Source of the DNA: Macrostomum lignano
Lineage: Eukaryota
DNA: 64,000 bases
Reading direction: 5' to 3'
NCBI GenBank assembly: GCA_002269645.1
Contig: NIVC01000687.1
Span: forward strand, 62,001-126,000
The notes under the pieces were generated by a model that saw only the letters and a list, made by a program, of their open reading frames with translations, was not told the origin of the DNA and made no database searches. A program made the position numbers and the translations under genes. Of the stretch, positions 1,126 to 27,600 are shown in pieces. Each line of letters begins with the position of its first letter. Within the stretch, counting starts at the first letter, position 1.

Positions 1126-1179
1126 CTGCGGGGGTTGGTGGAATCTGAATTGAATAGGGGATCAGGTTTGAGCTCTTAA

Positions 1180-2169: not shown

Positions 2170-2235
2170 CTGGGATGGTGTGGAGAGGATGGCAAGACGA
2201 ACATGATGATGATGGGCAAGATGGGCAAACTGAAA

Positions 2236-3820: not shown

Positions 3821-5008
3821 ATGACACCATTCCTTATAGCCGTTGCTGTCGCTCTCTGCAGCGGCTCAACTGTTTGGACTCTGGACAGTGCAGCATCTGG
3901 TAAGTCAAGCCTTTTGAATGATTGTGGAAATAATGAAGTAGTTTGTAAACAAGCTTAAATCCATGCGATTTCCAGTGTTTTCTCAAGAGGAAGTTGCGCA
4001 CACCACACCTGCTCCGATTCACCACGAGCCCGGTCGAAGCGTCGCTGACTGCGCTCTGAAATGCGAGCAGCCCATCGTGAAGTTCTGCTCCGCCTTCGCC
4101 TTCGTGCCAGAGAAGAAGCTCTGTCTGCTCTCCGAGATAACAACTGCCGATTTTGCACCTGTCGCTCCTGGTGAACTGGTTTATCGAAAGCTTATAGCTA
4201 GTAAGTTTTAAATCGAGCCTGTGTTCACTAATAATGAAATGAATAGCAGTGAAATTCTAAAAGGTGTGAAAAGTCGCTCAATGGTAGCAAATATCAATCC
4301 CTTTGATTAATAAATGAATCACTAGTTCACGCACCGCTAGACACACTTAAACATTGTTTGCTTTTTTGAAATATCAGGACAAATCGTCCAGATCAACGGA
4401 CGAGAATTCCAAGTGATTCAGCACAGGTCGAAGGGCGAGCTGAGCTTTGCTCGCAGCTGGACTGAGTATGAGAACGGCTTTGGAGACGATACGGACTTCT
4501 GGATTGGTGAGCAGGACACTTTAGCTTTACCAAACACCAATCGAATCAATAAAGACTTAAGAATGATTTCATTTTTTTCATTTCAGGCCTTCGAAAAATC
4601 CATGAGCTGACCGGAAGCTCGCCGAAGCTTCTGCGAGTCGAGGCCGTCACCTGGTCGGATGAGCTGTACGTCTGCGAGTACTCCGGCTTCACGGTGGCCG
4701 ATGCCAGCACGAACTACACCATGACTGGCATTTCGTACCTGAGCGGCAGCTCCAACACGACTGCCGATTCGTTCACCTTTAACAGTGGGATGCAGTTCTC
4801 CACCATGGACCGGGACAACGACCAATTTGGAAATCATTGTTCCAGCAGCTTTGGAAACTCCGGTTGGTGGTTCAAAAGCTGCTCGCATACCAACCCAAAC
4901 GGTATCTATTATAGCACTGCTATGACTAAAACAAATACAATGCACTGGGCTAGTGCTACATCCGGGAATGATGTTGCACTGAAGAGCATTCGATTGATGA
5001 TCCATTAG
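3821..5008 (+). CDS. Secreted PAN/apple + fibrinogen-related domain protein FReD-A1 (284 aa; exons 3821-3899, 3976-4200, 4378-4506, 4587-5008)
   Basis: Signal peptide MTPFLIAVAVALCSG. PAN-like motif CALKC..CSAFAF..KLCLL. FReD motifs VIQHRSKGELSFARSWTEYENGFG, FWIGL, FSTMDRDND, GWWFKSC, NPNG. All introns GT-AG, phase 1; total 855 nt. TATAAAA at 3745. Confidence 0.92.
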
Positions 5009-5744
5009 GTTTGATGCCAATTAGCAGTCACCTGCCTACGCTGAACTGGAGACAACTATTTTAATAACATCAAACTGGTATCTCGCGTGGCAGTTGAGCA
5101 ATCCAACTCACTCAAGACTATAACCGTACGAGAAAATAAGTGTAAGTGAGCTTTAGTAGGACACATTACCAAGGAGCTGTAATCCATTGATGCGAGCGTT
5201 GCAGTTTACGATCGTGAAAATTTTTTGACTCTTAGCTTATTTATTCTAAGCTATTGTTCTAGCTTAAGCAGTAACTCAGTACGTCAGTCTAATTAAAAAT
5301 TACTGATAAAAAAAGCATTCGTTTTTTGTTCAGAAAAAGTTGTCAAGTTTCTTAAAAAAACTGTGTATTCCTGTCGATTTCTGTGTATCTGTGAACCTCT
5401 ACACTTTGTATGACAAACGTTCCTTCTCGCTTTCTCACTTTCTCAAAAAATCACAACTGCGGTACCCAAAAAAAGCTCCATTGTGAAAAAATCTTAAAAT
5501 GTAAGCTTTACAAAAAATATTTTGATTTATTGACTATTGACAAAATCATTTTCTAACCCGTGCGTTTCTAATTCATATTCATATTTTTTCTAACCGTCCA
5601 AGATTCCGAAGTCCATAAACTGAAACTAAGTTTTTCGTTATGTAAATTTCTCTTGTTCTTAGCCTAATGTATTCCACACTGTACCACTAATCTACCCCGC
5701 AAGTGTTTTGGTAGCAGATAATCTCAGTAAGTATTCTCCGCTGC

Positions 5745-6480
5745 CATAGCAGCACTGTCCAGATTCCCCGCTACCATAGACAGCACTCTCCATATTTTCC
5801 CCGCTGCCATAGACAGCACTCTCCATATTCTCCCCGCTGCCATAGACAGCACTCTCCATATTCCCCGCTCCCATAGACAGCACTCTCCATATTCTCCCCG
5901 CCGCCATAGACAGCACTCTCCATATTCTCCCCGCTGCCATAGACAGCACTCTCCATATTCTCCCCGCTGCCATATACAGCACTCTCCATATTCCCCGCTC
6001 CCATAGACAGCACTCTCCATATTCCGAGATGCCATAGACAGCACTCTCCATATTCCGAGATGCCATGGACAGCACTCTTCATATTCCGAGATGCCATAGA
6101 CAGCAATCTCCATATTCCGAGCTGCCATAGACAGCAATCTCCATATTCCGAGCTGCCATAGACAGCACTCTCCATATTCCGAGATGCCATAGACAGCACT
6201 CTCCATATTCCGAGATGCCATAGACAGCAATCTCCATATTCCGAGCTGCCATAGACAGCAATCTCCATATTCCGAGCTGCCATAGACAGCAATCTCCATA
6301 TTCCGAGCTGCCATAGACAGCACTCTCCATATTCCGAGATGCCATAGACAGCACTCTCCATATTCCGAGATGCCATAGACAGCAATCTCCATATTCCGAG
6401 CTGCCATAGACAGCAATCTCCATATTCCGAGCTGCCATAGACAGCAATCTCCATATTCCCAGCTGCCACAGACAGCACTC
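5745..6480. repeat. 31/33-bp minisatellite (ATAGACAGCACTCTCCATATTCCGAG[A/C]TGCC)n
   Basis: Tandem periodicity; a shorter version lies at 19430-19650. Confidence 0.95.
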
Positions 6481-7149
6481 CAGTCCTGGCTTGCATGGAA
6501 TACATTTTATTGATACTATTCCACTGAATCAAGAAGAGTGTCTGTGCAGAATATTCGAGGCGAAAATAAAGGACATATATCCAAGGCAAGCTTAAATTTA
6601 CTCAACTCATTATATCCCTTTTATCTGTTTTAGCTGTTCTATCTATCTGTTTTAGCTGTTCTATCATCTCAACCTACTTGCCTATATTACGTTTTTATTA
6701 CCATTCACTTTTCTTGAATGCAAGACGTTCTATAAAAATAAACTGATAAAGTCTTTAAACTTGACCTATCAACGGCATAAGCAAAATGATCTACCATCAG
6801 AGCCAAAATCTGTTTGCTGTTTGATTATTACTGTTGAGTTCCTGGCGATCAAAGACTACGAATATTTCGACTATTACGTTGCAATACAGAACCATAAATT
6901 CCAGGGTAAATATATTCAACAGCTTAACCAACCCACCTCCAACTCACACTGTCACGCGGCAAAAAAGTTAAACAATGCATTTAATGCAAGTTTCAGTATC
7001 GTGTGCAGGAACCACTAGTGACTCGTCGTTGGCTCGATGGGGTTTATTTCTTGAGAGACTCTGACTGCCAGTCGTGTGGCTTAATTCGTAAATGCGCATT
7101 ATTTTGAGAATCGGTATCGTTAGCGCTCATTTCGGCACCGTAGGCACTT

Positions 7150-8815
7150 ATATTGGCGCCGCAGGCAGGCACTCATTTTGGCGCCGCAGGCAGGCACTCA
7201 TTTTGGCGCCGCAGGCAGGCACTCATTTTGGCGCCGCAGGCAGGCACTCATTTTGGCGCCGCAGGCAGGCACTCATATTGGCGCCGCAGGCAGGCACTCA
7301 TTTTGGCGCCGCAGGCAGGCACTCATTTTGGCGCCGCAGGCAGGCACTCATTTTGGCGCCGCAGGCAGGCACTCATTTTGGCGCCGCAGGCAGGCACTCA
7401 TTTTGGCGCCGCAGGCAGGCACTCATTTTGGCGCCGCAGGCAGGCACTCATTTTGGCGCCGCAGGCAGGCACTCATTTTGGCGCCGCAGGCAGGCACTCA
7501 TTTTGGCGCCGCAGGCAGGCACTCATTTTGGCGCCGCAGGCAGGCACTCATATTGGCGCCGCAGGCAGGCACTCATATTGGCGCCGCAGGCAGGCACTCA
7601 TTTTGGCGCCGCAGGGAGGCACTCATTTTGGCGCCGCAGGCAGGCACTCATTTTGGCGCCGCAGGCAGGCACTCATATTGGCGCCGCAGGCAGGCACTCA
7701 TTTTGGCGCCGCAGGCAGGCACTCATTTTGGCGCCGCAGGCAGGCACTCATATTGGCGCCGCAGGCAGGCACTCATATTGGCGCCGCAGGCAGGCACTCA
7801 TTTTGGCGCCGCAGGGAGGCACTCATTTTGGCGCCGCAGGCAGGCACTCATTTTGGCGCCGCAGGCAGGCACTCATATTGGCGCCGCGAGGCAGGCACTC
7901 ATTTTGGCGCCGCAGGCAGGCACTCATTTTGGCGCCGCAGGCAGGCACTCATATTGGCGCCGCAGGCAGGCACTCATTTTGGCGCCGCAGGCAGGCACTC
8001 ATTTTGGCGCCGCAGGCAGGCACTCATATTGGCGCCGCAGGCAGGCACTCATTTTGGCGCCGCAGGGAGGCACTCATATTGGCGCCGCAGGCAGGCACTC
8101 ATATTGGCGCCGCAGGCAGGCACTCATATTGGCGCCGCAGGCAGGCACTCATTTTGGCGCCGCAGGCAGGCACTCATTTTGGCGCCGCAGGCAGGCACTC
8201 ATATTGGCGCCGCAGGCAGGCACTCATTTTGGCGCCGCAGGCAGGCACTCATATTGGCGCCGCAGGCAGGCACTCATATTGGCGCCGCAGGCAGGCACTC
8301 ATTTTGGCGCCGCAGGCAGGCACTCATATTGGCGCCGCAGGCAGGCACTCATTTTGGCGCCGCAGGCAGGCACTCATTTTGGCGCCGCAGGCAGGCACTC
8401 ATTTTGGCGCCGCAGGCAGGCACTCATATTGGCGCCGCAGGCAGGCACTCATTTTGGCGCCGCAGGCAGGCACTCATTTTGGCGCCGCAGGCAGGCACTC
8501 ATATTGGCGCCGCAGGCAGGCACTCATATTGGCGCCGCAGGCAGGCACTCATTTTGGCGCCGCAGGCAGGCACTCATATTGGCGCCGCAGGCAGGCACTC
8601 ATTTTGGCGCCGCAGGCAGGCACTCATATTGGCGCCGCAGGCAGGCACTCATTTTGGCGCCGCAGGCAGGCACTCATATTGGCGCCGCAGGCAGGCACTC
8701 ATATTGGCGCCGCAGGCAGGCACTCATATTGGCGCCGCAGGCAGGCACTCATATTGGCGCCGCAGGCAGGCACTCATTTTGGCGCCGCAGGCAGGCATAC
8801 ATTTTGGCGCCGCAG
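7150..8815. repeat. 25-bp satellite (AT[T/A]TTGGCGCCGCAGGCAGGCACTC)n, about 66 units
   Basis: Highly homogeneous tandem array, which explains the 578-610 aa periodic ORFs. Confidence 0.98.
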
Positions 8816-10418
8816 GCAATCATTTTGCATGGCGCCGCATCCAGGCAATCCTTTTGGCATTGCGCAGGGAGGCGCTCATTTTGTATTGGAGGGGGGCGGG
8901 TTGGCTGTTGCTGAGTATGCATAAATGTGTCCTTAATTTTTCAGCTGTTGATTCAGTAGAATTTTAGTCTAAGTCCGCAACTGATCTATTTTCTGCGTGT
9001 ACTGCAACACGCTCGTAGTCCATCTAAGCAATCGCTGGACTAGTAGGCCTGGACTAGCGGAGTCGACCGCGGTTAGTACGCCTATGTACGCTGCAAATAT
9101 ACCTGTAGCGGTTATTTAAAACTATTTAGAGAAGACAATGGAGTTAGTGCATGAATTTCTTTAACCATAGTCTATAAATAATCAGAGATTCATGCCGCAT
9201 TGCACTTTGTGAAGATATCATTGATACGTGGCAGGCTGGTAACCCGCACAGCAAGCAATCTGAAGCCTGCAATCCAATGATTACTCGTAAGATATCCTCG
9301 GTCTTTCCTCTATTGATGTGTGGAATATTTTAAAATGTTGGGACTTTACATGCATACCACTAAAGGAAAGACTAGATTTGATTTTGTTCCATGATTTTAC
9401 GGAGGCTTTCTTTTAACAAAAACTGTTAAGCCAATTTGTAATGTTCTGTTAGTTTTATTCTCTAAATTGTTAATCGGATTTCTTCGGTCATTTTAAATAC
9501 AATTAAATGCGTAGAGATGCTACACATTCTTTACGAGTACATGCAGGCATTTCCCAGCCCTAACAATGAGTTTGACTGCTCCTTTGTAATCTAATCAAAG
9601 TCAAGCGACTTTGCCAACAAATCGTTTGCCACTTTGCTACGGTTTCAGCGAAGCCTTTCGCAAAATTCTTGTGTGGTTTACGTGCAGCTAAAATAGACTA
9701 CCGAGGACGGCCAAGGCATCGAGAGCTGCCCGAGAAGAAGGCCCGCTGCAGTGTCAGCTCAAGCTAAATGGTCTCAAAGTGAGATATGATTAAACGACCA
9801 AGCCTGCAGGGGAGTCTCCCCGAGCACAATTGTAGCAGACCTCGGTAACAGAGGCCAAGAAAGGCGGACGGACTAACTGATACCGATAATAATTAGTTTA
9901 TAAGCAGCCTATCGTTTGACGACGAATATTACTCAAAAACTGCAGAAACCATTTAAAAAGGAGAGACAACCAATTGATAAACAGGAAAAGCTTATTTACC
10001 AATTAGAATTCATAGCTGAATATATATAAAGAACGTATTATTTGCTTTATTAACATGTTCATATATGAAATACTTTCAGTCTGGATTTTAATCATCCAAA
10101 TATGAAAGCTAAATAAATAAACATTGATATTATTAACATTTGCTCAAAATAGTTTTTAAGCGCGGAGTCAATTAACAGCCAATAGCATTATTCATTAAGC
10201 AGAGCGATTCCCCCTACTTCAAGTAGCATAGATGACGTTTCATACGAAATTAGGATTATCAAAACAAAAATTACCTGGCAATCAAAAGCCATTGTGGATC
10301 AGTTCAGAAGACTTTTGGCCCAAATATTTAATTAGTCAGGACTTAAAACTGCCACTTTCCATGACTTGCTCCGCCCACCCAAAGAATCGACAAGATCCGA
10401 ATTTGTTAAACTTTGCAG

Positions 10419-10844
10419 TCACCGCAACCGCGAACTGACATCCTGAAACTCCCTGTCCGCCTCCTTCTTCTTTTTAAGAAACTTCTCAGCCTTGCCCCTG
10501 TCCTTCTCCTGCAAAGCCGATTTGGCGTGCTGAGCATAGGTGGCCGACAGCTGCTGCAGCACTGAGCAGTACTGCCGCTTCTCAGCCTCGCCACAGTTGG
10601 CCAGCAGCTGCTTGTGCTGGGCGAGGCGCTGCTCAAGGCCTCTGACTGCTTCGGCAGCTTTCGAGTTTGTGCCAGCGTGCGGCTTCAGCAGGCTGATCTC
10701 GTACTGCAGCACGTAGGCGCTGCTCTCCGGCACTGAGCCCTGAGGATGGCCAGCCCGACTGCCGCCTGCTCTGCTAGCCGATGCCTGGCGGCTTGGCGGC
10801 AGCTCCTGGTTGGTGTGCTCAATTAGCAGCCACTGCTCACGGAC
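10419..10844 (-). other. Duplicated CC2D1 terminal exon (orphan copy, unit X), intact
   Basis: 426 nt with TCAG|GTC acceptor and stop codon. It has 3 differences from 21642-22067, all synonymous. Confidence 0.9.
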
Positions 10845-10949
10845 CTGAGGGAAGGGGAATGAGGGATGCCATAGATCTAGGGATTGCTGAGTGGAACAAT
10901 GGGAGTTGGGGTTGTGAGTTGGGAGTTCGAAGTTCGTTAGGAGCTCGCC

Positions 10950-11189
10950 CCGTTCCCCCCGTTCTTTCCTATTGGCTGAAAGCATATTTTGATGCGAGCT
11001 CATACTATGCTGGGACAGACCTTTTAGAGGGGAACAAAAGCGAAAACGAGACGAAAAATACTTTGTCTATGGCAATCACGAGCCAATAGGAAAGAACGGG
11101 GGGGGGGGAAAGGGATGTCAAAAGCGAAAATCGAGCGAGATAAAAATAACTTGCTCAGATTAGCACTCCATTCTATTCTTTCCTCCATG
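10950..11189. mobile_element. Left-truncated copy of the CATGGAGG-terminated MITE
   Basis: Matches 30770-31000, including the right terminal inverted repeat ending TCCTCCATG. Confidence 0.85.
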
Positions 11190-11194
11190 GTGGT

Positions 11195-11335
11195 GACCCC
11201 CCAGTCCTTGGACTTAAAAGTAGTACGCAGCCTTCAGAAGTGCCGCGCAATAGCTGCGGCTGAGCTGTCGGTTGCAAATTTGTCTATTAGGGCAGGTGTA
11301 ATCAATTGTTATTATTTGTATTAGTTATTATCAAC
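11195..11335 (+). mobile_element. 3' tail of SINE family 1 (head lost)
   Basis: Occupies the position equivalent to the full SINE at 22130-22470 in unit Y. Confidence 0.7.
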
Positions 11336-12083
11336 TTAAATAATTACTCTAGATGAATATAGACTAAAAGCGCTTTCGAAAAAAAACAATTTTCATAGAA
11401 TTAGCTGTTAATAAGTCGTTGCATAGAATTAGCTGTTAATAAGCCGTTTGACGCGCCCAGCTTTTGTTGTTGCTAGTTGTTTTCCATTTATGCTCGCGAA
11501 TCAAGCGGATGCGACAGGGGCATAAAATCCCTCACAAGTTTGCTAATTCCAGAGGCAAATATGGTGCACTGTCTTGTAAAGCGATGCACTAATAGCGTAG
11601 AAACGTTTTACTCTCATATCCTCAATGCAAGCGGTAAGAAAGCAACTGCTTATTGCTGAAAAGTCAAAGCGCTGGATAGAGCCCCTGTTGGAATATACTT
11701 TTTAGAATGCAACTATTGCTGCACACATGCTGTGGGGGCGGCGGTCAGAAGTCTCTAGCAGGTATTGGGAAGTTTCAAGTCAGTAGGGTTGTCATGCAGA
11801 ACTGACGACTTCGAGAAATGCGAAAAAAACAGATGGAGAGGCTGAGCCATGGGGATGCGTTAACCGTGAGGGTAGAAAATAAGTCAAGAAGGGGAGCAGC
11901 TGGTTGGCGCATTGTCTTTTACTAACCGCCACTCAAAGCCTAACCCGCGCTCAGCCTCGCATTCGCCCCGCCCCGCAGTCCCGAGTAACCATGGGAAAGT
12001 TTTTGTCACGCAAATAAAAAAGAACCTACGATGGTGAGAATAGGGACGGAGTTGAACCGCTCGTGCTAAGCGAATTCGACAGC

Positions 12084-13473
12084 ATGTCTCGATTCCTACT
12101 AGCTGTTGGATTCTCCCTGTGCCTGCTGATCACTGTTGTCAGCGCCGAGACTGGTACGTTGCATTAACAGATAAGACTGTCTTCTTTCAGAACTCGTATA
12201 TCTTTGATCAATACTCGCACATGTCAAGTTGATGCGCAAAATGTTTCATTGCAGTTTTTTACACTGATGAGGCTATCCAGACAACATCTACTCCAACGAC
12301 GGTAGCGTCTGGTGGCAGCCTGACCGAGTGCGCGCTGAAATGCAAGCTGCAATTCCTGAAGGGCTGCTCCGCTGCCGCCTTTGTATCTGGGACGCAAAAA
12401 TGCCTCCTCGCGGACACAACCAATGCCGACTTTCCTGGCGGAGTAGCTGTCCGAAAGCAAGCTGCGAGCACTCGTAAGAAGCTGAATGCGATGGCTGTTA
12501 AGTTTGGCTACGCTTTACTTTGATTATTCAAGCAAATCACTTCAGACCTTACCGTGTTCCAAGCAGAAAATAGCTGTTAAATTTGTGCACAAACTTAGCA
12601 ACCATGTTGATTAATTTTCACCTTACTAAGAGTACGTGTATGTCATTATCCGCCACAACTGTGACATTTTAGAATACTTAATAGCAACTTAAAATGAGTG
12701 TAGCAACCAAAAGTTATACTTTTTGAGCACAGTTACATGTAGACTGCTCAAGATATTACAGCTATTCTCTGTCGGCAACTAACGAATGAGTTCGAAAAGA
12801 ATTCAATGACAACAGAGAATTGATTGCGATTATTTTTCAGAAGACCCAGTTCAAATCGAAGGCCGAACATTCAAAATCATTCAACACCGATCGAAGGGAC
12901 TGCTCAGCTTCGGTCGCGGATGGACTGAGTATGAGGACGGCTTTGGAGATGAGACCGACTTCTGGATTGGTGAGCAGTAATGGATTGTCACCAGAAAGGA
13001 ATACATGCCATAGTTAAGGTGTCATATCAAATACATTTTCAGGTCTGAGAAAAATTCACCAGCTGACCGGAAGCTCGCCGAAGCTTCTGCGAGTCGAGGC
13101 CGTCACCTGGTCGGATGAGCTGTACGTCTGCGAGTACTCCGGCTTCACGGTGGCCGATGCCAGCACGAACTATACCATGACCTACACTTCGTACCTGAGC
13201 GGCAGCTCCAACACGACCACCGACTCGCTTGCGGATAACAAAGGGAAGCAGTTCTCCACAATTGACCGCGACAATAACCAAATCAGTAGCTCCTGCTCTG
13301 CTGCGCGTGGCAACTCCGGTTGGTGGTTTAAAAGCTGCACAAAGTCCAACCCGAACGGAATTTATCACGCCTCTCCAGTGAATAATAATTTAAACTATAT
13401 TTACTGGACAGGTGCCACAGGTGGCAGTGTGTTTACACTGAAGAGCATTCGACTCATGCTACAGCTGGCTTGA
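12084..13473 (+). CDS. Secreted PAN/apple + FReD protein FReD-B1 (282 aa; exons 12084-12153, 12255-12473, 12841-12969, 13043-13473)
   Basis: Signal peptide MSRFLLAVGFSLCLLITVVSA. PAN-like CALKC..GCSAAAF..KCLL. FReD motifs present. GT-AG introns in the same phases as FReD-A; total 849 nt. Confidence 0.92.
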
Positions 13474-14029
13474 GTGCCCGAATCGGCGACTCTGCAGCAA
13501 GCAGCTCGAGATGTCGTTCAATAAGTCGCGAGTTTATCGACGAACTTGACAAAACAAACTGGTCTATAAAACAGAAATTGTTCTTCACACAGACATGCAA
13601 CAGTTGCCCAGAAAATATTTTTTATCAAATTTTTAAAATAGGAGCTAAGTCCGCAAAGTAAGTTTTTAATTTTCAAAATTATTTTCTTTTTAAATTTTGA
13701 AATCTCTATTATAATTCCTTTCAAAAAGCTAAGTTTAAAATAAAGCTAATAGTTTCCAGAATTTGAACTTCAACTGTCAACAGCAACAAATCACTTGTTT
13801 GTGTTGTTCTTTTCTTATTATTTCTGTCGGATGAAGAGTGCGTTAAATAAAATGCCTGGAGCTATCATTAGTGGGATGAAGCTATTGAAGAGACTGACTG
13901 TTCGTTGTCAACCATCAACCATTTCAACGTACGGTTGCGCAAGCTTTCGACCCATAGGAAATAGCAGGTCTCATCAGACAAACACGAATATGTCAGACGA
14001 AGGATTCAGTGAGCATAGCAGTGGCTTTT

Positions 14030-14333
14030 ACTAGAGGCAGGGGGCTGTGCGCAGCTTGGCGCACTTCAAGCGAAATTGTCGCACAACCGACGAGGGGCAT
14101 TACTGCTCATTCTGCCGACTCCCCTGAGTAGGCACACAAACGCGCAGATAAGTGCGCAGTCATACGCACAGGCACGCACTCAGATAGGAGTGCACAACGG
14201 CCCTAACTTGGTAATCAAGGGCGTTAATTGCCCGAGCAGAGCCAATTTTGCTCCAAATTAATTTGACTGCATTCGGAATCGAGCCTGGGCTCCTGGCACA
14301 TCAGAGCGTCGCGCTAGACCACTCTATGGCCGC
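14030..14333 (-). mobile_element. tRNA-derived SINE family 2 (unit X)
   Basis: A-box and B-box like head; homologous to 28640-28958 on the opposite strand. Confidence 0.6.
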
Positions 14334-15200: not shown

Positions 15201-15253
15201 CTGCTGGGGTTGGTGGAATCTGAATTGAATAGGGGATCAGGTTTGAGCTCTTA

Positions 15254-17540: not shown

Positions 17541-18729
17541 ATGCAATCAATCCTCATTGCCGTTGCTGTCGCTCTCTGCAGCGGCTCAACTGTTTGGACT
17601 CTGGACAGTGCAGCATCTGGTAAGTCAAGCTTTTTGAATGAGTGTGGAAGTACTTCAGTAGTTGTTAAGAAGGTTTAAATTCATGCGATTTGCAGTGTTT
17701 TCTCAAGAGGAAGTTGCGCACACCACACCTGCTCCGATTCACCACGAGCCCGGTCGAAGCGTCGCTGACTGCGCTCTGAAATGCGAGCAGCCCATCGTGA
17801 AGTTCTGCTCCGCCTTCGCCTTCGTGCCAGAGAAGAAGCTCTGCCTGCTCTCCGAGATACCGACTGTCGATTTTGCACCTGTCGCTCCTGGTGAACTGGT
17901 TTATCGAAAGCTTATGGCTAGTAAGTTTTTATATCGAGCCTGTGTTCACTAATAATGAAATGAATAGCTGTGAATTCTAAAAGGTGTGAAAAGTCGCTCA
18001 ATGGTAGCAAATATCAATCCCTTTGATTTATAAATGAATTCACTAGTTCACGCACCGCTAGACACACTTAAACATTGTTTGCTTTTTTGATATATCAGAA
18101 CGAATCGTCCAGATCAACGGACGAGAATTCCAAGTGATTCAGCACAGGTCGAAGGGCGAGCTGAGCTTTGCTCGCAGCTGGACTGAGTATGAGAACGGCT
18201 TTGGAGACGATACGGACTTCTGGATTGGTGAGCAGGACACTTTAGCTTCACCAAACACCAATCGAATCAATAAAGACTTAAGAATGATTTCATTTTTTAC
18301 ATTTCAGGCCTTCGCAAAATCCATGAGCTGACCGGGAGCTCGCCGAAGCTTCTGCGAGTCGAGGCCGTCACCTGGTCGGATGAGCTGTACGTCTGCGAGT
18401 ACTCCGGCTTCACGGTGGCCGATGCCAGCACGAACTACACCATGACTGGCATTTCGTACCTGAGCGGCAGCTCCAACACGACTGCCGATTCGTTCACTTA
18501 TAACAGGGGGATGCAGTTCTCCACCATGGACCGGGACAACGACCAATTTGGAAATCATTGTTCCAGCAGCTTTGGAAACTCCGGTTGGTGGTTCAAAAGC
18601 TGTTCGCATACCAACCCAAACGGTATCTATTATAGCACTGCTATTACTAAAACAAATACAATGCACTGGGCTAGTGCTACATCCGGGAATGATGTTGCAC
18701 TGAAGAGCATTCGATTGATGATCCATTAG
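17541..18729 (+). CDS. Secreted PAN/apple + FReD protein FReD-A2 (284 aa; exons 17541-17619, 17696-17920, 18099-18227, 18308-18729)
   Basis: Same exon sizes as A1 (79/225/129/422 nt). Signal peptide MQSILIAVAVALCSG. TATATAA at 17468. Confidence 0.92.
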
Positions 18730-19429
18730 GTTTGATGATAATTAGCAGTCACCTACCTACGTTGAGCTGGAGCCAACTATTTTAATAACATCAAACTGGT
18801 ATCTCACGTGGCAGTTGAGCAATCCAACTCACTCAAGACTATAACCGTACGAGAAAATAAGTGTAAGTGAGCTTTAGTAGGAAACATTACCAAGGAGCTG
18901 TAATCCATTGATGCGAGCGTTGCAGTTTATGATCGTGCCTTTTTTAACTCTTAATATTCAAGCTTAGGCAGTAACTCAGTACGTCAGTCTAATGAAAAAT
19001 TACTGATAAAAAAGCATTCGTTTTTTGTTCAGAAAAAGTTGTCAAGTTTCTTAAAAAAAAACTGTGTATTCCTGTCTATTTCTGTGTATCGGTGAACCTC
19101 TACACTTTGTATGACACATATTCCTTCTCGCTTTCTCACTTTCTCAAAAAATCACAACTGCGGTACTCAAAAAAACCTTTAACCTCATACTGAAAAAATC
19201 TAAAAATTTAAGCTTTTCAAAAAATCTTTTGATTATTGTGACAAGATCATTTTCTAACCCGTGCGTTTCTAATTCATATTCATATTTTGCTAAGCGTCCA
19301 AGATTCCGAAATCCATAAACTGAAACTAAGTTTCGTTATGTAAATTTCTCTTGTTCTTAGCCTAATGTATTCCACACTGTACTCTTAATCTACCCCGGAA
19401 GTGTTTTGCTAGCAAATAATCTTAGTAAG

Positions 19430-19650
19430 TTTCCCCGCTCCCATAGACAGCACACTCTCCATATTCCCCGCTCCCATAGACAGCACTCTCCATATTCCCC
19501 GCTGCCATAGAAAGCACTCTCCATATTCCCCGCTGCCATAGACAGCACTCTCCATATTCCTAGCTGCCATAGACAGCACTCTCCATATTCCTAGCTGCCA
19601 AAGACAGCACTCTCCATATTCCGAGCTGCCAAAGTCAGCACTCCAGTCCT
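19430..19650. repeat. 31-bp minisatellite, short version (about 7 units)
   Basis: Paralogous to 5745-6480. Confidence 0.9.
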
Positions 19651-21641
19651 GGCTTGCGTGGAATACATTTTATTGATACTATTTCACCGAATCGAGGAGA
19701 ATATCTGTGCAGAATATACGAGTCGAAAATAAATAAAGTACATATATACGTCGTACAAAGCAGGCCTAAATTTACTCAACTCATTTATCCCCTTTTTATC
19801 TGTTTTAGCTGTTCTATCATCTCAAAGTACTCGTATTTGCCTATAATATTAAGTTCTTATTACCATTCAGTTTTCTTGAATGCAAGACGTTCTACAAAAA
19901 TAAACTATTAAAGTCTTTAAACTTGACCTATCAACGACATAAGCAAAATGATCTACAAACAGAGCCAAATTCTGTTTGCTGTTTGATTATTACTGTCGAG
20001 TTTTTGGCGAACAAAGACTACGAATATTTCGACTATTACGTTGCAATGCAGAACCTTAAATGCCGGGGTAAATATATTAAACAGCTTAACCAAGCCAGCT
20101 CCAACTCACACTGTCACGCGGCAAAAAGGTAAACAATGCCTTTAATGCTTGTATCAGTATCGTGTGCAGGAACCACGAGTGACTCGTCGTTGGCGTCCTG
20201 ATCACCATGCAGTCTTGAACTCTTGGGGCAGCTGCTATCAGACATTCAGAACCGTCAGTCGCGAACTGTTCAGCATTCTGTAGGGCACCCCTTGCTGAAC
20301 TCTTCTTTATACGAAGTCCCAGACATGCTCGATGGGGTTTATTTCTAGAGAGATTTTGACTGCCATAGTGTGGCACAGGGGCGTCGCATTGGATTTTACA
20401 ATATGTGTGGACGAAGCCAAGAATTCTACATGTACATGACTTAATTCGTAAATGCGCATTATTTTGAGAATCGGTATCGTTAGCGCTCATTTCGGTACCG
20501 CAGGCAGGCACACATTTTGCATGGCGCCGCATCCAGGCAATCCTTTTGACATCGCGCAGGGAGGCGCTCATTTTGTAGTGGGGGGGGGGGGTTGGCTGTT
20601 GCAGAGTATGCATAAATGTGTCCTTAATTTTTCAGCTGTCGATTCAGCAGAATTTTAGTCTAAATCCGCAACTGATCTATTTTCTGCTACACATTCTTTA
20701 CGAGTACATGCAGGCATTTCCCAGTCCTAACAATGAGTTTGACTGCTCCTTTGTAATCTAATCAAAGTCAAGCGACTTTGCCAACAAATCCTTTGCCACT
20801 TTGCTACGGTTTCAGCGAAGCCTTTCGCAAAATTCTTGTGTGGTTTACGTGCAGCTGAAATAGACTACCGAGGACGGCCAAGGCATCCAGAGCTGCCCGT
20901 GAAGAAGGCCCGCTGTGTCAGCTCAAGCCAAATGGTCTCAAAGTGAGATATGATTAAACGACCAAGCCTGCAGGGGAGTCACCCCCGAGCACAATGGTAG
21001 CAGACCTCGGTAACAGAGGCCAAGAAAGGCGGACAGCCCAACTGGTAGTTAATTATGAGTACACTGCAGCATGCGCACATGAAAAAGGCACAGTTTCCCG
21101 TTAATAATTAGTTTATAAGCAGCCTATCGTTTGACGACCAATATTACTCAAAAACTGCAGAAACCATTTAAAACGAGGAAAAAAACCAATTGATAAACAT
21201 GAAAAGCTTATTTACCAATTAGAATTCATAGCTGAATATATATATATAGAGAAAGTATTATTTGCTTTATTAACATGTTCATATATGAAATACTTTAAGT
21301 CTGAATTATAATCATCCAAATATGAAAGCTAATTAATAAATAAACATCGATATTATTAACATTTGCTCAAAATAGTTTTTAAGCGCGGAGTCAATTAACA
21401 GCCAATAGCATTATTCATTAAGCAGAGCGATTCCCCCTACTTCAAGTAGCATAGATGACGTTTCATACGAAATTAGGATTATCAAAACAAAAATTACCTG
21501 GCAATCAGAAGCCATAGCGGATCAGTTCAGAAGACTTTTGGCCCAAATACTTAATTAGTCAGGACTTAAAACTTCCACTTTCCATGGCTTGCTCCGCCCA
21601 CCCAAAGAGTCGACAAGACCCGAATTTGTTAAACTTTGCAG

Positions 21642-24600
21642 TCACCGCAACCGCGAACTGACATCCTGAAACTCCCTGTCCGCCTCCTTCTTCTTTTTAA
21701 GAAACTTCTCAGCCTTGCCCCTGTCCTTCTCCTGCAAAGCCGATTTGGCGTGCTGAGCATAGGTGGCCGACAGCTGCTGCAGCACTGAGCAGTACTGCCG
21801 CTTCTCAGCCTCGCCACAGTTGGCCAGCAGCTGCTTGTGCTGGGCGAGGCGCTGCTCAAGGCCTCTGACAGCTTCGGCAGCTTTCGAGTTCGTGCCAGCA
21901 TGCGGCTTCAGCAGGCTGATCTCGTACTGCAGCACGTAGGCGCTGCTCTCCGGCACTGAGCCCTGAGGATGGCCAGCCCGACTGCCGCCTGCTCTGCTAG
22001 CCGATGCCTGGCGGCTTGGCGGCAGCTCCTGGTTGGTGTGCTCAATTAGCAGCCACTGCTCACGGACCTGAGGAAAGGGAAGTGAGGGATGGCATAGATC
22101 TAGGGGTTGTTGAGTTTAACAATCCATGACGGGGTTGTAGCCTAGTGGTTAGAGCGTCGGACTCACGACTTCAAAGTCGGGGGTTCGATTCCCGATCCTA
22201 CTCACAACAATTTGTGTCCTCGAGCAAGACACTTAACTCTGCATTGCTTCAGTTCACCCAGCTGTAAAATAGGTGCCAGAATTTTCTGGGGTAATTGAGG
22301 GTGTATGTGTGTGTGTGTGTGTGTGGCGACCCCCCGTCATTGGACTGAACAGCAGTACGTATGCAGCCTTCGAAAGCGCCGCGCAAAAGCTGCGGCTGAG
22401 CTGTCGGTTGCACATTTGTCTATTAGGGCAGGCATAATGAATTGATATTATTAGCAGTTATTATGTTTTAATAAATTATTTTTAAAGAGCTCTAGTTATT
22501 GCTTGGAGTTGTTTCCCATTCATGCTAGCGAATCAAGCGGATACGACTAGGGCACAGATATCCCACACATCACACACAAGTTTGCTAAATTCTAATCAAA
22601 TATGGTGCGCTTGCCTAGTAAAGCGATGCATCAACAGCGTAAAACTTTTTTATCTCAGTCCCTCAATGCAAGCAGTGGGAAACCAACTGCTTACTGATGA
22701 GACAGAGCGCTGGATAAAGCCTCTGTTGAAATTTACTGCTTTAAAAAGCATTCAGATTCCCTGCTGCGTGTAGATAGATCAAATATTGCAATGACTGTCA
22801 CTTGGGATTCTACTACTTTGCGTAGCCTCTGCAAAGACTGAATAAAGCAACCGTTGCTGCACACATGCTGTAAGAGGGCGGCGGTCAGAAGTCTCTAGCA
22901 GGTATTGGAAGGCTTCAAGCCAGTAGGACAGTCAATCTGAACTACATGCTTCGCGGAATGCGAGAAAAGCAGATGGAGAGGCAGAGCCATGGGGAAGCGT
23001 TAACTGTAAGGGTAGGAAAGAAGTCAAGAAGGAAGCAGCTGGTTGGCGCATTGTATTTACTAACCGCCTCTCATGGTTTAGCCCGCGCTCAGCCTCGCAT
23101 AACAGAAGGCGCTCCGCCCACAGTCCCTGGTAACCATGGAAATTTTTTGTCACGCAAATAAAAAAGAACCTACGATGGTGAGAATAGGGATGGAGTTTAA
23201 TCACCCTTGCTGAGCAAATTCGAAATCATGCCTCACTTCCTACTAGCTGTTGGATTCTCTCTGTGCCTGCTGACTGTTGTCAGCGCCGAGAATGGTACGT
23301 TGCTTTGTCAAATCAGTCTGTCTTCTTTAAGAACTCGTATATCTTTGATCAATAAATGCCAATTTGTCAATGTAAAATGTCAATTTGATCCAAAAATATT
23401 TCCTTGCAGTTTTCTACACTGATGAGGCTATCCAGACAACATCTACTCCAACGACGGTAGCGTCTGCTGGTGGCAGCCTGACCGAGTGCGCGCTGAAATG
23501 CAAGCTGCAATTCCTGAAGGGCTGCTCAGCTGTCGCCTTTGTGCCAGGGACGCAAAAATGCCTCCTTGCGGACATCACTAATGTTGACTTTCCTGGCGGA
23601 GTAGCTGTCCGAAAGAAAGCTGCTAGCACTCGTAAGAAATTTATTGTGATGGCTGCTAAGATTGCTTATTTTGCTCATTTGAGCAAATTACTTCATTTTA
23701 CTTCATACTCCATATGTTCATTATTGATCTCCTTACTACCAGTACGTGTCCATTATCCGCCTCAATTGTGATATTTTAGAATACTTAAAACTTAAAACTT
23801 AAACTTGAAATGAGTGTACCAACCAAAAGTTTTACTTTTTGAGCACAGTTACATGTTTACTTTTCAAGATATCACAGCTATTCTCTGCCGCCAACTAACG
23901 AATGATTTCGAAAAGAATTCAATGTCAAGAGAGATTTAATTGTTATTTTTTAGAAGATCCAGTTCAAATCGAAGGTCGAACATTCAAAATTATTCAACAC
24001 CGATCCAAAGGACTGCTTAGCTTTGGTCGCGGCTGGAGTGAGTATGAGGACGGCTTTGGAGATGAGACGGACTTCTGGATTGGTGAGCAGTAAAGAAGGA
24101 TTGTCATCTGAGCAGCGCATAAAATGATTTATTTAGACAGAATGCTTGGTCGGACAAAAGATGATATAAAATACATTTCAGGTCTCCGTAAAATGCACCA
24201 GCTGACCGGGAGCTCTCCGAAGCTTCTGCGAGTCGAGGCCGTCACCTGGTCGGATGAGCTGTACGTCTGCGAGTACTCCGGCTTCACGGTGGCCGATGCC
24301 AGCACGAACTACACCATGACCTACACTTCGTACCTGAGCGGCAGCTCCAACACGACCAGCGACTCGCTTGCCGCTAACAAAGGGAGGCAGTTCTCCACAA
24401 CTGACCGCGACAATGACCAAAGAAGTGACTCCTGCTCTGCTGATCGTGGCAACGCCGGTTGGTGGTTTAACAGCTGCTCAAAGTCCAATCCGAATGGAAT
24501 TTTTTTCGGAAAGTTGGTGTATGATTTGAACTATATTTACTGGACAGGTGCCACAGGTGGCAGTGTGTTGACACTGAAGAGCATCCGACTCATGCTACAT

Positions 24601-27600
24601 CTGGCCTGATTGCCCGAATCGGCGAATCTGCAGCAAGCAGCTCGAGATGTCGTTCAATAAGTCGCGAGTTTATCAAGGAACTTGACAAAAACAAACTGGT
24701 CTATAAAACAGAAATTGTTCTTTACACAGACATGCAAAAGTTGCCCAGATAACATTTTTTATCAAAATTTTAAAATAGGAGCTAAATCTGCAAGCAAGTT
24801 TTTAACCTTCAAAATTATTTTCTTTTTAAAATTTTTGGAATTTCTATTATAATTCTTTTGAAAAAAGCAAAGTTTAAAATAAAGCTAATAGTTCCCAGAA
24901 TTTGAACTTTAACTGTCAGCAGCAACAAATTACTTGTTTGTGTTGTTTTAATCTCATTCTTTTTGTCGGATGAAGAGTGCGTTAAATAAAATGCCTGGAG
25001 CAAGACGCTCAATCATTAGTGGGATGAAGCTATTGAAGAGACTGACTGTTCATTGTCCCTGGCCCAAAGAGGGGGAATTGGGGTCGAAATCAATCATTTC
25101 AACGTACGGTTGCGCAAGCTTTCGACCCATGGGAAATAGCAGGTCTCATCAGACAAACACGAATACGAAGGATTTAGTGAGCATAGCAGTGGCTTTTACT
25201 AGAGGCAGGGGGCTGTGCGCAGCTTGGCGCACTTCAAGCGAAATTGTCACACAACCGACGAGGGGCATTGCTGCTCATTCTATGTGAGGCACACACTCAC
25301 ATAGGAGATTCCGATTTTGCTCCAAATTAATGTGACTGCATTCGGAATCGAGCCTGGGCTCCTCGCGCTGGACCACTCTATGGCGCTCCACAGAACTCCA
25401 TTTGGGCCATAGACAATAAGCAGCAAGTCTGCAATGGCTTGGTTCCCTCACTAAGTGTTAAATTGCCGGTTTTCTGAGGCTCAATTCGAAAATAAAATGT
25501 TTGAATATTTAATAATATACAATAATTTATTACACCTGGCCTAAAAGCAGATGTGCAACCGACAGCTTAGCGCATCTGAAGGCTGCGTACGGCTGTTCAG
25601 TCCAAGGACTGGAGGGGGGTCACCACACACCCCCAATTACCCCAGCGAATGCTGGAACCCATTTTACTGCTGCTGGGTAAACTGAAGCGATGCAGAGAGT
25701 TAAGTGGTCTTGCTCAAAGACACAAATTGTTCCAGTGGGATCGAGAATAGAACCTCCGACTTTCAAGTCGTAAGTCCGACGCTTTAACCACTAGGCTACT
25801 AGTACAACTCCCATTATTATGCTTCCAATAAGCAACCTGTGTCACAGCCTCTATATATCTTGTGAAAGTTCTATTAAGTAAAATTTATTTCAATGTCTCA
25901 TACAAATGACACACCTGGTCAGTCTGGGCTCCGGACAGCGGCTCGCGCAGTCGCACCTGAACCTCAAGCCGGCCGCCAACCGCCTTTCTGCCATCCATGA
26001 GATCAATGCCCCGGTGCAACGTGCACTGGGTCTCCAGGTCCTCCAGCTTCATTGTGGCCGACCCCAGCAGGCCGTCCTTCTTCAGAAAGCCACGCCGGTA
26101 CATGACATCGAATTTCAGTCCGCGAGTTTTGAACACCCGAGCGGTGCTGCGCGCTTTGCGGTTCACCTCGAAGCGGGTGGCGAAATCGTAGCTGGGATTG
26201 GCGCTGGCCTTCACCCAGCCCGTGCTCTGCGTCAGCGGCGACTCCGTGCTGATTGGCAGCTCGATTTTCACCTGCGGGGGTTGGTGGAATCTGCATTGAA
26301 TAGGGGATCAGGTTTGAGCTCTTAAACCAGCAGGTGAGATGGGGATGGCAAACCGGCAGGAGAGATGGGGATAGCAAACCGGCAGGTGAGATGGGGATGG
26401 CAAACCTACAGGTGAGATGGGGATGGCAAACCTACAGGTGAGATGGGGATGGCAAACCAGCAGGTGAGATGGGGATGGCAAACCAGCAGGTGAGATGGGG
26501 ATGGCAAACCAGCAGGTGAGATGGGGATGGCAAACCTACAGGTGAGATGGGGATGGCAAACCAGCAGGTGAGATGGGGATGGCAAACCAGCAGGTGAGAT
26601 GGGGATGGCAAACCAGCAGGTGAGATGGGATGGCAAACCTACAGGTGAGATGGGGATGGCAAACCAGCAGGTGAGATGGGGATGGCAAACCAGCAGGTGA
26701 GATGGGATGGCAAACCTACAGGTGAGATGGGGATGGCAAACCAGCAGGTGAGATGGGGATGGCAAACCTGCAGGTGAGTTGGTGAGGAGGGTATGGCCAT
26801 TGAGGAGCAATACCTTACCTGAGTCTCCAGATCTGACTCCTTAAAGCCTTCAGGCAGCGGCAGGCTGATGCCATTGAGCACTTTCACTTCAAGCGTGTTC
26901 TCCCCCAGATCCGGGTTGCACCTGACTGCGCTGACACTCTGCCAGATGAAGTTGAACTTCGGCGGCGGCCGCTTCAGCCGGCGCTGGCCCAGCAGGTAGT
27001 CCAGATCTGCGGTGGCGCTGCGGCCCAGCTTCGCCCAGCGGTCAGCAGTGGCGATTTGGCCCATGGATTTGAAGCGCCTGGCGTTCTCCTCGGCCAGGGC
27101 CAGCTTCTCCTGCGGGGGGAGGGGGCGGGCGTCCCAGAGTCACTTCAGAGTCGTTGCAGGTAGCACAGGTAAAATACGAAAGAAGTGACTTAATTTAAAC
27201 GACACTTGGTGCCAATTTGAGAAACTGTTTATTGTCTGAGACTCTTGTCTGAGACTCTGTCTGAGACGTTTCTATAACGACTTTTGAGGACGTATCTGAT
27301 TGGTATTTGAGACGTCACTTTATTGAATTAGAATCGCATTTCGCATTTATAACAACTCGATTTATTCTACTTGAGAAATGGCTCTTTAGCGATTCTTGTT
27401 GCGGTAAGACGATACTTTTAATGGGGAGACGAGAGAGAGAGTGAGAGAAGAGAGGGCGAGAGGAGAGGATTAGAGGAGAGGGGAGGGGACAGGGGAGGGT
27501 GAGAGGAGAGGGGAGGAGACAGGGGATGAAGAGGAGAGGGGAGGGGACAGGGGAGGGTGAGAGGAGAGGGGAAGAGACAGGGGAGGGTGAGAGGAGAAGG

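What the first reader, a model, noticed from the sequence alone, without database searches (positions are those of the whole stretch)
3821..24609. Amplifying PAN-FReD lectin family with hypervariable ligand-binding loops
There are four intact secreted genes in two subfamilies (A, B) with the same exon structure. B1 and B2 differ at 1 of the first about 59 residues of exon 4. Over the next about 57 residues they differ at about 18 amino-acid-changing codons plus an indel, against about 4 synonymous-only codons (e.g. IDRDNNQISSSCSAAR vs TDRDNDQRSDSCSADR; IYHASPVNNN vs IFFGKLVYD). This stretch is the FReD P-subdomain, which carries the Ca2+ and ligand sites in ficolins and tachylectin-5. The pattern fits a diversifying recognition system (immune, mucus or allorecognition), analogous to snail FREPs but with PAN instead of IgSF domains. 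The function is inference.
Basis: partly seen in the sequence, partly recalled or inferred. Interest (0 to 1): 0.82.

Follow-up and report, generated by a model that had tools for sequence, protein, structure and literature searches.

The report
Flatworm PAN–fibrinogen lectin-like gene cluster
Four intact, tandemly duplicated genes of the flatworm Macrostomum lignano encode small, probably secreted proteins with a PAN/Apple domain and a truncated fibrinogen-like domain; one pair differs mainly in the predicted binding loops, but at about the neutral rate, so diversifying selection is not shown.

Summary
Four intact 4-exon genes lie at the stated coordinates: A1, A2, B1 and B2. Each encodes a signal-peptide-like N-terminus, a PAN/Apple domain and a fibrinogen-related domain (FReD) lacking its N-terminal A subdomain. 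They sit in an 11–14 kb tandem segmental duplication in Macrostomum lignano.

Codons 59–116 then hold 18 replacement codons, one codon indel and 4 synonymous-only codons. The clustering is significant. It maps onto the P subdomain, including positions that align with calcium and pocket residues of human fibrinogen γ.

The "hypervariable / diversifying" reading is not demonstrated.
- dN/dS in that stretch is about 0.7, and dN is no higher than intron divergence.
- Family site models are not significant.
- A branch-site signal comes from two adjacent triple-hit codons and disappears without them.
- The A pair and four other sets of near-identical paralogues show no such pattern.

Part of the contrast comes from the conserved first half of exon 4. 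It holds a 95–112 nt tract identical between A and B, most likely a GC-rich gene-conversion tract.

PAN+FReD combinations are already reported in molluscs. Expression and function remain untested. Interest is moderate to low.

The parts
3821..5008 (+). Gene A1 (284 aa). Exons 3821-3899 (signal-peptide-like), 3976-4200 (PAN/Apple), 4378-4506 and 4587-5008 (FReD B and P subdomains).
   Evidence: GT-AG splice sites and an open frame. Pfam Fibrinogen_C 2.2e-37; PAN_1 19.7 bits, below the 21.4 cutoff.
12084..13473 (+). Gene B1 (282 aa). Exons 12084-12153, 12255-12473 (PAN/Apple), 12841-12969, 13043-13473.
   Evidence: A PAN-only model of exon 2 matches PAN/Apple folds.
17541..18729 (+). Gene A2 (284 aa). 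Exons 17541-17619, 17696-17920, 18099-18227, 18308-18729.
   Evidence: It differs from A1 at 11 residues; whole-CDS dS is 0.043.
23228..24609 (+). Gene B2 (281 aa). Exons 23228-23294, 23410-23631, 23954-24082, 24182-24609.
   Evidence: Its loop sequence is also present in the independent public gene model P0016.
13060..13218 (+). B1 exon-4 codons 6-58, the homogenised tract. Counterparts: A1 4604-4762, A2 18325-18483, B2 24199-24357. A core of 95 nt is identical in all four genes (B1 13078-13172).
   Evidence: A and B share a 101-112 nt identical run although the CDS is only 70-72% identical overall; 0 of 20000 permutations reached this. A-B pS is 0.14-0.19 here against 0.5-0.74 elsewhere. GC3 is 0.79-0.86 here against 0.41-0.66 in the other exons.
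13219..13470 (+). B1 P-subdomain coding part (exon-4 codons 59-142). It carries 20 of the 30 B1/B2 amino-acid differences.
24358..24606 (+). B2 P-subdomain coding part, the counterpart of 13219-13470.
13363..13389 (+). B1 loop patch YHASPVNNN. The B2 counterpart at 24502-24525 reads FFGKLVYD. In the first five codons 9 of 15 nt are changed, including TCTCCA>AAGTTG.
   Evidence: It is the only source of the branch-site signal. No donor sequence occurs elsewhere in the window.
1..14080 (.). Segmental-duplication unit 1 (C2-exon copy, 26-nt minisatellite, A1, 31-nt and 25-nt minisatellites, tail-exon copy, B1).
   Evidence: Self-BLAST and TRF.
14081..25310 (.). Segmental-duplication unit 2 (the same order, with A2 and B2). 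A partial third unit lies at 25311-26785.
   Evidence: The mismatch fraction varies from 1.4% to 17% along the unit.

Best explanation
What it is. These are four members of a family so far found only in Macrostomum lignano. The proteins are small (about 280 aa) and probably secreted. A PAN/Apple module, encoded by one phase 1-1 exon, takes the place of the FReD A subdomain. It is followed by the FReD B and P subdomains, which keep the calcium-loop motif DRDND and the P-domain cysteine pair.

How it probably works (inferred). The protein most likely acts as an extracellular, calcium-dependent lectin-like binder. The P-subdomain pocket would contact the ligand. The PAN module would add a second binding or oligomerising surface.

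How the locus evolves (shown).
- An 11-14 kb unit carrying one A and one B gene was duplicated in tandem.
- Patchy gene conversion then acted on the copies. It homogenised the A pair from exon 2 onward (about 2% divergence).
- It also left a GC-rich tract in the first half of exon 4 that is identical even between A and B.
- The rest of the B gene body stayed at 16-20% neutral divergence.

In B1/B2, purifying selection is strong on the PAN domain and the FReD core (dN/dS 0.14). The P-subdomain loops accumulate replacements at roughly the neutral rate (dN/dS about 0.7).

My reading (inferred). The binding loops drift or are re-tuned under weak constraint after duplication. This is ordinary birth-and-death evolution of an invertebrate FReD family. 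It is not a demonstrated hypervariable recognition system.
For: - Organism and family: all close homologues are M. lignano 'Fibrinogen C-terminal domain-containing' proteins. At least 10 diverged subfamilies share the PAN-like + truncated FReD layout.
- FReD: Pfam E about 1e-37 over profile positions 39-218 of 221. PDB sequence hits are angiopoietins, ficolins and tenascin. The fold search returns ficolin, ANGPTL and fibrinogen gamma at E about 1e-11.
- PAN: sub-threshold PAN_1 matches in 12 of 14 members scanned, on the same profile region, and one member passes the cutoff. For the family N-terminal profile against PDB, the top 19 hits are all PAN/Apple modules, with plasminogen at 5.4e-4. 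The PAN-only model matches SML-2, plasminogen PAN, HGF N domain and TgMIC4 apple domains.
- Duplication and mosaic divergence.
- Conversion tract between A and B.
- Selection estimates.
- Synonymous divergence in the variable part (pS 0.18-0.23) equals that of exons 1-3 (0.19). The excess of replacements is therefore not local hypermutation.
- Birth-and-death: another locus holds a tandem array with a frameshifted copy and a PAN fragment carrying a stop codon.
Against: - The replacement clustering in the P subdomain is strong and recurs in the B1-B3 comparison. It hits positions homologous to calcium and pocket residues. That is also what adaptive re-tuning would look like.
- With one pair and about 30 substitutions, the tests cannot separate dN/dS of 0.7 from dN/dS above 1 at a subset of sites.
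- A post hoc sub-window (codons 64-99) gives dN/dS about 3, although it holds only about 13 changes and its boundaries were chosen after seeing the data.
- Lectin activity, secretion and expression were not tested.
- B1 carries Asn at the position of a calcium-ligand Asp, and B2 carries Phe at a family-conserved Tyr. Binding could therefore be altered or lost.
Confidence: 0.55

Rival explanations
1. The P-subdomain loops of the B lineage are under positive diversifying selection, because the proteins recognise variable targets such as microbes, mucus glycans, or self/non-self or mating partners. In this view the gene body is kept diverse while its flanks are homogenised.
For: - 18 of 30 amino-acid differences fall in one 57-codon window, p < 5e-5.
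- The replacement-to-silent ratio there differs from the rest of the gene, Fisher p = 0.002.
- The differences sit at positions aligned with fibrinogen gamma calcium and pocket residues.
- B3 (P0001) shows a third version of the same loop, and 10 of its 12 differences from B1 lie in the same part.
- The branch-site test with B1+B2 as foreground gives LRT 6.7, p = 0.005.
- The B gene body is more diverged (16-20%) than its duplicated flanks (1.4-7%).
Against: - dN/dS is 0.67-0.71 with intervals spanning 1, and the observed nonsynonymous share (22 of 30) is below the neutral expectation of 0.795.
- dN does not exceed intron divergence.
- M2a is no better than M1a.
- The branch-site signal vanishes when two adjacent triple-hit codons are removed. 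Such multi-nucleotide changes are a known source of false positives in this test (from my own knowledge).
- A1/A2 and the paralogue sets P0003/17/18, P0004/21/22, P0005/24 and P0090/176 have no P-subdomain differences at all.
Confidence: 0.25
2. B2, or the B lineage as a whole, is losing its ancestral binding function. The loops are simply unconstrained and the copy is on the way to becoming a pseudogene.
For: - The B2 branch is about 1.8 times longer than the B1 branch.
- B2 has Phe at the family-conserved Tyr after NPNG, and B1 has Asn at a calcium-ligand Asp position.
- Loop dN is close to the neutral rate.
- Decayed copies exist at another locus of the family.
Against: - All four reading frames and all splice sites are intact.
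- dN/dS in the rest of B1/B2 is 0.14, with an interval of 0.07-0.24, so the genes are still under purifying selection.
- The P-domain cysteines, the GWWF motif, the NPNG motif and the first calcium-ligand Asp are retained.
Confidence: 0.12
3. Artefact. B1 and B2 are mis-assembled alleles or homeologues of a polyploid, repeat-rich genome, and the pattern has no biological meaning as a tandem family.
For: - M. lignano has a repeat-rich genome with a recent genome duplication (from my own knowledge).
- Minisatellite arrays flank the genes and differ in copy number between the units.
- Public gene models for this locus are chimeric and poor: P0011, P0013 and P0016.
Against: - P0016, a separate sequence record that differs from the window by one residue in its A2 part, contains A2-type then B2-type sequence. 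It then continues into sequence that matches the window just downstream of B2. The B2 loop sequence in it is identical.
- B1-type sequence is seen in P0002 and P0013.
- Both units are joined by unique sequence within one contiguous window.
Confidence: 0.05

Closest known systems
Mollusc FReD genes with a PAN/Apple domain (Biomphalaria glabrata FREP1/Bg179, four Crassostrea gigas genes, some Lottia gigantea FReDs; PMC7588048)
   Same: A PAN/Apple module is combined with a fibrinogen-related domain in a lophotrochozoan. The genes belong to expanded families of secreted FReD proteins.
   Different: In Bg179 the PAN domain accompanies an IgSF domain and an interceding region. Here the PAN domain is joined directly to a FReD that lacks its A subdomain. 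No orthology was tested. The flatworm family's closest non-Macrostomum relatives are FReD-only proteins of Branchiostoma.
Snail FREPs (IgSF + FReD)
   Same: A lineage-specific, multi-copy family with an N-terminal module plus a C-terminal FReD.
   Different: There is no IgSF domain. I saw no evidence of somatic diversification, and that cannot be tested here. No link to parasite defence is known.
Ficolins and tachylectin-5A
   Same: The FReD fold and sequence match. The calcium-loop motif and the P-domain disulfide are conserved. The variable residues lie in the region that forms the ligand site in these lectins.
   Different: There is no collagen-like stalk, and the A subdomain with its disulfide is absent. 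Acetyl-group binding was not tested. The loops equivalent to gamma 291-301 and 356-362 are deleted.
PAN/Apple modules (plasminogen N-terminal domain, HGF N domain, Sarcocystis SML-2 and Toxoplasma MIC4 lectins)
   Same: The family profile hits only these modules in the PDB. The predicted fold is beta-alpha-beta-beta-beta, with TM-score 0.61-0.64 to SML-2 and plasminogen PAN. Four core cysteines are invariant.
   Different: The domain is a minimal four-cysteine version without the outer Apple disulfide. Pfam scores are just below the cutoff in most members. The binding partner is unknown.

Membership tests
Fibrinogen-related domain (FReD, Pfam PF00147) | A significant match to the Fibrinogen_C profile and the FReD fold | tested here: met
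   E 2e-37 to 2e-36 for A1, B1 and B2. PDB sequence hits reach 9e-26. Foldseek E about 1e-11 to ficolins, ANGPTL and fibrinogen gamma.
Fibrinogen-related domain (FReD, Pfam PF00147) | A complete three-subdomain organisation (A, B, P), including the A-subdomain disulfide (gamma C153-C182) | tested here: not met
   The match starts at profile position 39-40 of 221. The alignment to fibrinogen gamma starts at about residue 184. The PAN exon sits where the A subdomain would be.
Fibrinogen-related domain (FReD, Pfam PF00147) | The P-subdomain calcium loop (gamma D318, D320, and the carbonyls of 322 and 324) and the C326-C339 disulfide | tested here: met
   DRDND and both cysteines are conserved across the family. 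The exception is B1, which has Asn at the gamma-D320 position.
PAN/Apple domain | A profile match to PAN models | tested here: inconclusive
   PAN_1 scores 19.7-21.2 bits against a cutoff of 21.4 for A1, B1 and B2. Of 14 family members scanned, 12 give matches on the same profile region and one (P0169) passes at 23.5 bits. One member is named 'Apple domain-containing protein' by UniProt.
PAN/Apple domain | Homology to PAN modules of known structure, and the PAN fold with its core cysteines | tested here: met
   For the family profile against PDB, the top 19 hits are all PAN/Apple modules, the best at 5.4e-4. The AlphaFold model (pLDDT 72) has a top hit list made almost entirely of PAN-fold proteins, with TM-score 0.61-0.64 and weak E-values of 0.02 or more. 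Four cysteines are invariant.
Snail-type FREP | One or two IgSF domains upstream of the FReD | tested here: not met
   No Ig-family Pfam match in any member scanned.
Ficolin | A collagen-like Gly-X-Y stalk N-terminal to the FReD | tested here: not met
   No collagen match and no Gly-X-Y repeats in the sequences.
Diversifying (positively selected) recognition gene family | dN/dS above 1 at binding-site codons, robust to the model used | tested here: not met
   dN/dS is 0.67-0.71. M1a versus M2a gives p = 0.35 and 0.75. The branch-site signal depends on two multi-hit codons. Power is low, so the feature is not excluded.
Lectin (functional class) | Demonstrated carbohydrate or acetyl-group binding | not testable with these tools
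   Only homology to lectin FReDs and PAN lectins is available.

The most novel reading that the evidence does not exclude
The B-type PAN-FReD genes form a genuinely diversifying recognition repertoire in a free-living flatworm. Gene conversion shuffles a conserved scaffold, while selection maintains different binding-loop versions (B1, B2, B3) that recognise different microbial, mucus or mating-related ligands.
Probability: 0.2. Interest if true: 0.55.

Novelty: new variant of a known kind. Interest (0 to 1): 0.36.

Why it matters
Expanded FReD families are a recurrent solution for innate recognition in invertebrates such as snails, mosquitoes, oysters and amphioxus. Flatworm FReDs, by contrast, are essentially undescribed.

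This locus shows that a regeneration and sexual-conflict model flatworm has its own expansion, with a PAN/Apple module fused to a FReD that has lost its A subdomain. It also gives a compact example of how gene conversion and loop divergence together shape tandem paralogues.

If the loops proved to be adaptively diversified, the family would be a tractable entry point into flatworm recognition biology, because RNAi and transgenesis are available in this species. As the evidence stands, it is an ordinary birth-and-death lectin-like family.

Tried and rejected
- Hypermutation of the loop region: rejected. Synonymous divergence there (pS 0.18-0.23) equals that of the rest of the gene.
- A donor for the B1 or B2 loop patch, as templated micro-conversion: none in the window. 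Other paralogues are no closer to B2 than to B1.
- Nucleotide-level constraint as the only cause of the A/B identical tract: unlikely. Other paralogues differ at synonymous sites there (pS about 0.4). That value is still lower than elsewhere, so some extra constraint or recurrent conversion across the family remains possible.
- The N-terminal domain as a divergent FReD A subdomain: rejected. The profile and the fold both hit PAN modules.
- Expression evidence: none obtained. The spliced proteins could not be looked up. P0001 is not on record. Literature searches found nothing on Macrostomum FReDs.
- The first full-length structure model was too uncertain in the P subdomain (pLDDT 41-60) to map surfaces. 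Mapping was done instead by alignment to human fibrinogen gamma, whose sequence I checked against 1fib.
- The sub-window giving dN/dS of 3.1 (codons 64-99) was discounted. Its boundaries were chosen after seeing the data, and it holds only about 13 changes.
Full report
**What is in the window.**
Self-comparison shows a tandem segmental duplication. Unit 1 spans 1-14080, unit 2 spans 14081-25310, and a partial third unit spans 25311-26785. Each full unit carries one A gene and one B gene on the + strand. I built the gene models by hand and checked them:
- A1: 3821-3899, 3976-4200, 4378-4506, 4587-5008
- A2: 17541-17619, 17696-17920, 18099-18227, 18308-18729
- B1: 12084-12153, 12255-12473, 12841-12969, 13043-13473
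- B2: 23228-23294, 23410-23631, 23954-24082, 24182-24609

All twelve introns are GT-AG and phase 1. All four frames are open (284, 284, 282 and 281 aa). The nearest database proteins are all from Macrostomum lignano, so the window comes from that flatworm.

**Domains.**
Pfam gives Fibrinogen_C at E about 1e-37, but only from profile position 39-40 onward. Alignment to human fibrinogen γ starts at about residue 184. I had typed the γ sequence from memory, and one search confirmed it is identical to PDB 1fib. The FReD A subdomain and its disulfide are therefore absent. A full-length model matches ficolins, ANGPTL and fibrinogen γ at E about 1e-11.

Exon 2 encodes the N-terminal module.
- Pfam PAN_1 scores just under its cutoff in A1, B1 and B2 (19.7-21.2 against 21.4 bits).
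- The same weak match recurs in 12 of 14 diverged family members, and one passes the cutoff.
- A profile of 14 N-terminal domains searched against PDB sequences returns only PAN/Apple modules in its top 19 hits. These include plasminogen at 5.4e-4, HGF N domain, SML-2 and TgMIC4.
- A PAN-only AlphaFold model (pLDDT 72) has a hit list made almost entirely of PAN-fold proteins, with TM-score 0.61-0.64 to SML-2 and plasminogen.

I accept the PAN-FReD architecture. The PAN module is one symmetric phase 1-1 exon, which fits an origin by exon shuffling (inference).

**Checking the observation.**
Exon-4 codons 1-58 hold 1 amino-acid difference. Codons 59-116 hold 18 replacement codons, a 1-codon indel and 4 synonymous-only codons. 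The clustering is not chance: 18 of the 30 differences fall in one 57-codon window, which 0 of 20000 shuffles reached. The boundary coincides with the start of the P subdomain. From my own knowledge of the fibrinogen γ structure papers, the P subdomain runs from γ287 to γ380.

The B1/B2 differences align with these γ positions:
- 320, 322 and 324, which are calcium-site positions
- 329 and 340, which are pocket residues
- 332 and 337
- the 348-363 loop

**Is it hypervariable or diversifying?**
Codon counts overstate the case, because several codons carry two or three changes.
- Nei-Gojobori counting for codons 60-116 gives Nd 22 and Sd 8, so pN is 0.165, pS is 0.232 and dN/dS is 0.67.
- The nonsynonymous share (22 of 30) is below the neutral expectation of 0.795.
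- Bootstrap intervals are 0.33-1.59 for the P subdomain and 0.07-0.24 for the rest of the gene.
- Introns differ by JC 0.18, 0.20 and 0.47, and the 5' flank by 0.156. Loop dN of 0.14-0.19 reaches the neutral rate but does not exceed it.
- Synonymous divergence in the loops equals that of exons 1-3, so there is no local hypermutation.

I wrote a codon-likelihood program and applied it to A1, A2, B1, B2 and three paralogues whose coding sequences I recovered from the Mlig_3_7 assembly.
- M1a versus M2a gives LRT 2.1 (p = 0.35). Without the converted tract it gives 0.6 (p = 0.75).
- Mean posterior dN/dS is 0.54 for the PAN region, 0.36 for exon 3, 0.21 for the first half of exon 4 and 0.49 for the P subdomain. 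Family-wide, the P subdomain is no more variable than the PAN region.
- A branch-site test with B1+B2 as foreground gives LRT 6.7 (p = 0.005). The inferred class covers about 1% of sites with dN/dS at the upper bound, and it consists of two adjacent codons, TCT CCA > AAG TTG.
- Removing those two codons brings the LRT to 0. Six adjacent nucleotide changes are more simply a single multi-nucleotide event than six selected substitutions.

Other comparisons give little support. A1/A2 has 11 amino-acid differences, of which 3 are in the P subdomain. The near-identical paralogue sets P0003/17/18, P0004/21/22, P0005/24 and P0090/176 have none there.

In favour of something special in the B lineage, a third B-type protein (P0001) differs from B1 at 12 positions. 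Ten of these are in the same part, and it has a third version of the loop after NPNGIY. The data therefore show weak constraint on the B-lineage binding loops. They cannot separate drift from adaptive re-tuning.

**The conserved half of exon 4.**
A and B are only 70-72% identical over the coding sequence. Yet they share a perfectly identical run of 101-112 nt in the first half of exon 4, of which 95 nt are identical in all four genes (A1 4622-4716, B1 13078-13172, and so on). Permutation gives 0 of 20000 at nucleotide level and 1 of 20000 when only codons with identical amino acids are used.
- A-B pS is 0.14-0.19 there, against 0.5-0.74 elsewhere.
- GC3 is 0.79-0.86 there, against 0.41-0.66 in the other exons.

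I read this as a gene-conversion tract with GC bias, lying on top of strong protein constraint. Part of the striking contrast within exon 4 is therefore produced by homogenisation of its first half.

Divergence along the duplicated unit is mosaic:

| Segment | Divergence |
|---|---|
| Left part of the unit | 1.4% mismatch |
| A gene, exon 2 to exon 4 | about 2% |
| A intron 1 | 21% |
| 3' flanks of A and B | about 7% |
| B gene body and its upstream 1 kb | 11-20% |

Variants are also shared in a mosaic way among the B-type sequences of other records. This pattern is what repeated patchy conversion in a tandem family produces.

**Assembly and expression.**
The public model P0016 differs from the window by one residue in its A2 part. 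It contains A2-type and then B2-type sequence with the identical B2 loops. It then continues into sequence that matches the window just downstream of B2. P0002 and P0013 carry B1-type sequence. An assembly artefact is therefore unlikely. I could obtain no transcript evidence and found no literature on these genes.

**Comparison with known systems.**
The family has at least 10 diverged subfamilies in M. lignano. Another locus holds a tandem array with a frameshifted copy and a PAN fragment interrupted by a stop codon. Among the best 150 of 9389 library hits, every protein that I looked up whose match also covers the PAN region is from M. lignano. The nearest others looked up are FReD-only proteins of Branchiostoma.

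PAN/Apple + FReD genes have already been reported in Biomphalaria (FREP1/Bg179), Crassostrea and Lottia (PMC7588048). The combination is therefore not new. The direct replacement of the A subdomain, and the occurrence in a flatworm, are new as far as I could search. The proteins are not snail-type FREPs, because they have no IgSF domain. They are not ficolins, because they have no collagen stalk.

**Verdict.**
The most likely account is a Macrostomum-specific family of probably secreted PAN-FReD lectin-like proteins, evolving by tandem duplication, patchy gene conversion and weakly constrained change in the binding loops. Positive diversifying selection remains possible, at about 0.2-0.25, but is not shown. 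The novelty class is a new variant of a known kind, and interest is moderate to low.

Noticed in passing
window 28966-30201 (-), 25885-26271 (-), 14814-15200 (-), about 730-1120 (-), 21642-21956 (-), 10419-11003 (-): A CC2D1/Lgd-like gene lies on the minus strand. Its DM14 exon matches Pfam at 1.4e-30. Its C2-like exon and a downstream 'tail' ORF are duplicated along with the units. The B genes therefore lie antisense between C2 and tail exon copies, apparently nested in an intron, and the A genes lie downstream.
   Followed up: partly
window 1178-2168, 15253-16295, 26324-26782; 5740-6480 vs 19431-19643; 7142-8883: Minisatellites with 26-, 31- and 25-nt periods lie inside the duplicated units, with very different copy numbers. 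The 31-nt array has 23.6 against 6.8 copies. The 25-nt array has 69.6 copies in unit 1 and only a remnant in unit 2. This explains the 14.1 kb against 11.2 kb unit lengths.
   Followed up: partly
window 53323-54432 (-): A single 369-aa ORF has a hydrophobic N-terminus, a PAN-like motif (PAN_3 at 21.0 bits against a cutoff of 21.1) and a weak concanavalin-A-like / Laminin_G_3 match. It may be a second kind of PAN + lectin-fold secreted protein in the same window.
   Followed up: partly
window 4604-4762, 13060-13218, 18325-18483, 24199-24357: GC3 is 0.79-0.86 in the homogenised exon-4 tract, against 0.41-0.66 in the other exons. This looks like GC-biased gene conversion. One synonymous site (GGA/GGG) is shared within units (A1 with B1, A2 with B2) rather than within subfamilies.
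   Followed up: partly
window 13276-13278 (B1 codon 78 of exon 4): B1 has Asn where all other family members have the Asp that aligns with the calcium ligand D320 of fibrinogen gamma (P0025 has Glu there). B2 has Phe at the family-conserved Tyr after NPNG.
   Followed up: no
L003 8097-9098 and 13592-13759: At another M. lignano locus the PAN-FReD gene P0005 is flanked by an upstream paralogue with a frameshift in exon 4 and by a downstream PAN fragment containing a stop codon. This is a tandem array with decaying copies.
   Followed up: partly
window 12301-12306 (B1 exon 2): The public models P0001, P0013 and P0014 skip the first 18 residues of the PAN exon by using an internal 'gtag' acceptor. 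This may be an alternative 3' splice site, but there is no transcript evidence.
   Followed up: no
window 34284-36119 (-), 38528-40317 (-), 57105-64000: SIAH-like RING/zinc-finger ORFs, a possible WD-repeat-like ORF, and 2.2-kb tandem repeats at the right end of the window (57105-60422 against 59312-62615, 94% identical).
   Followed up: no
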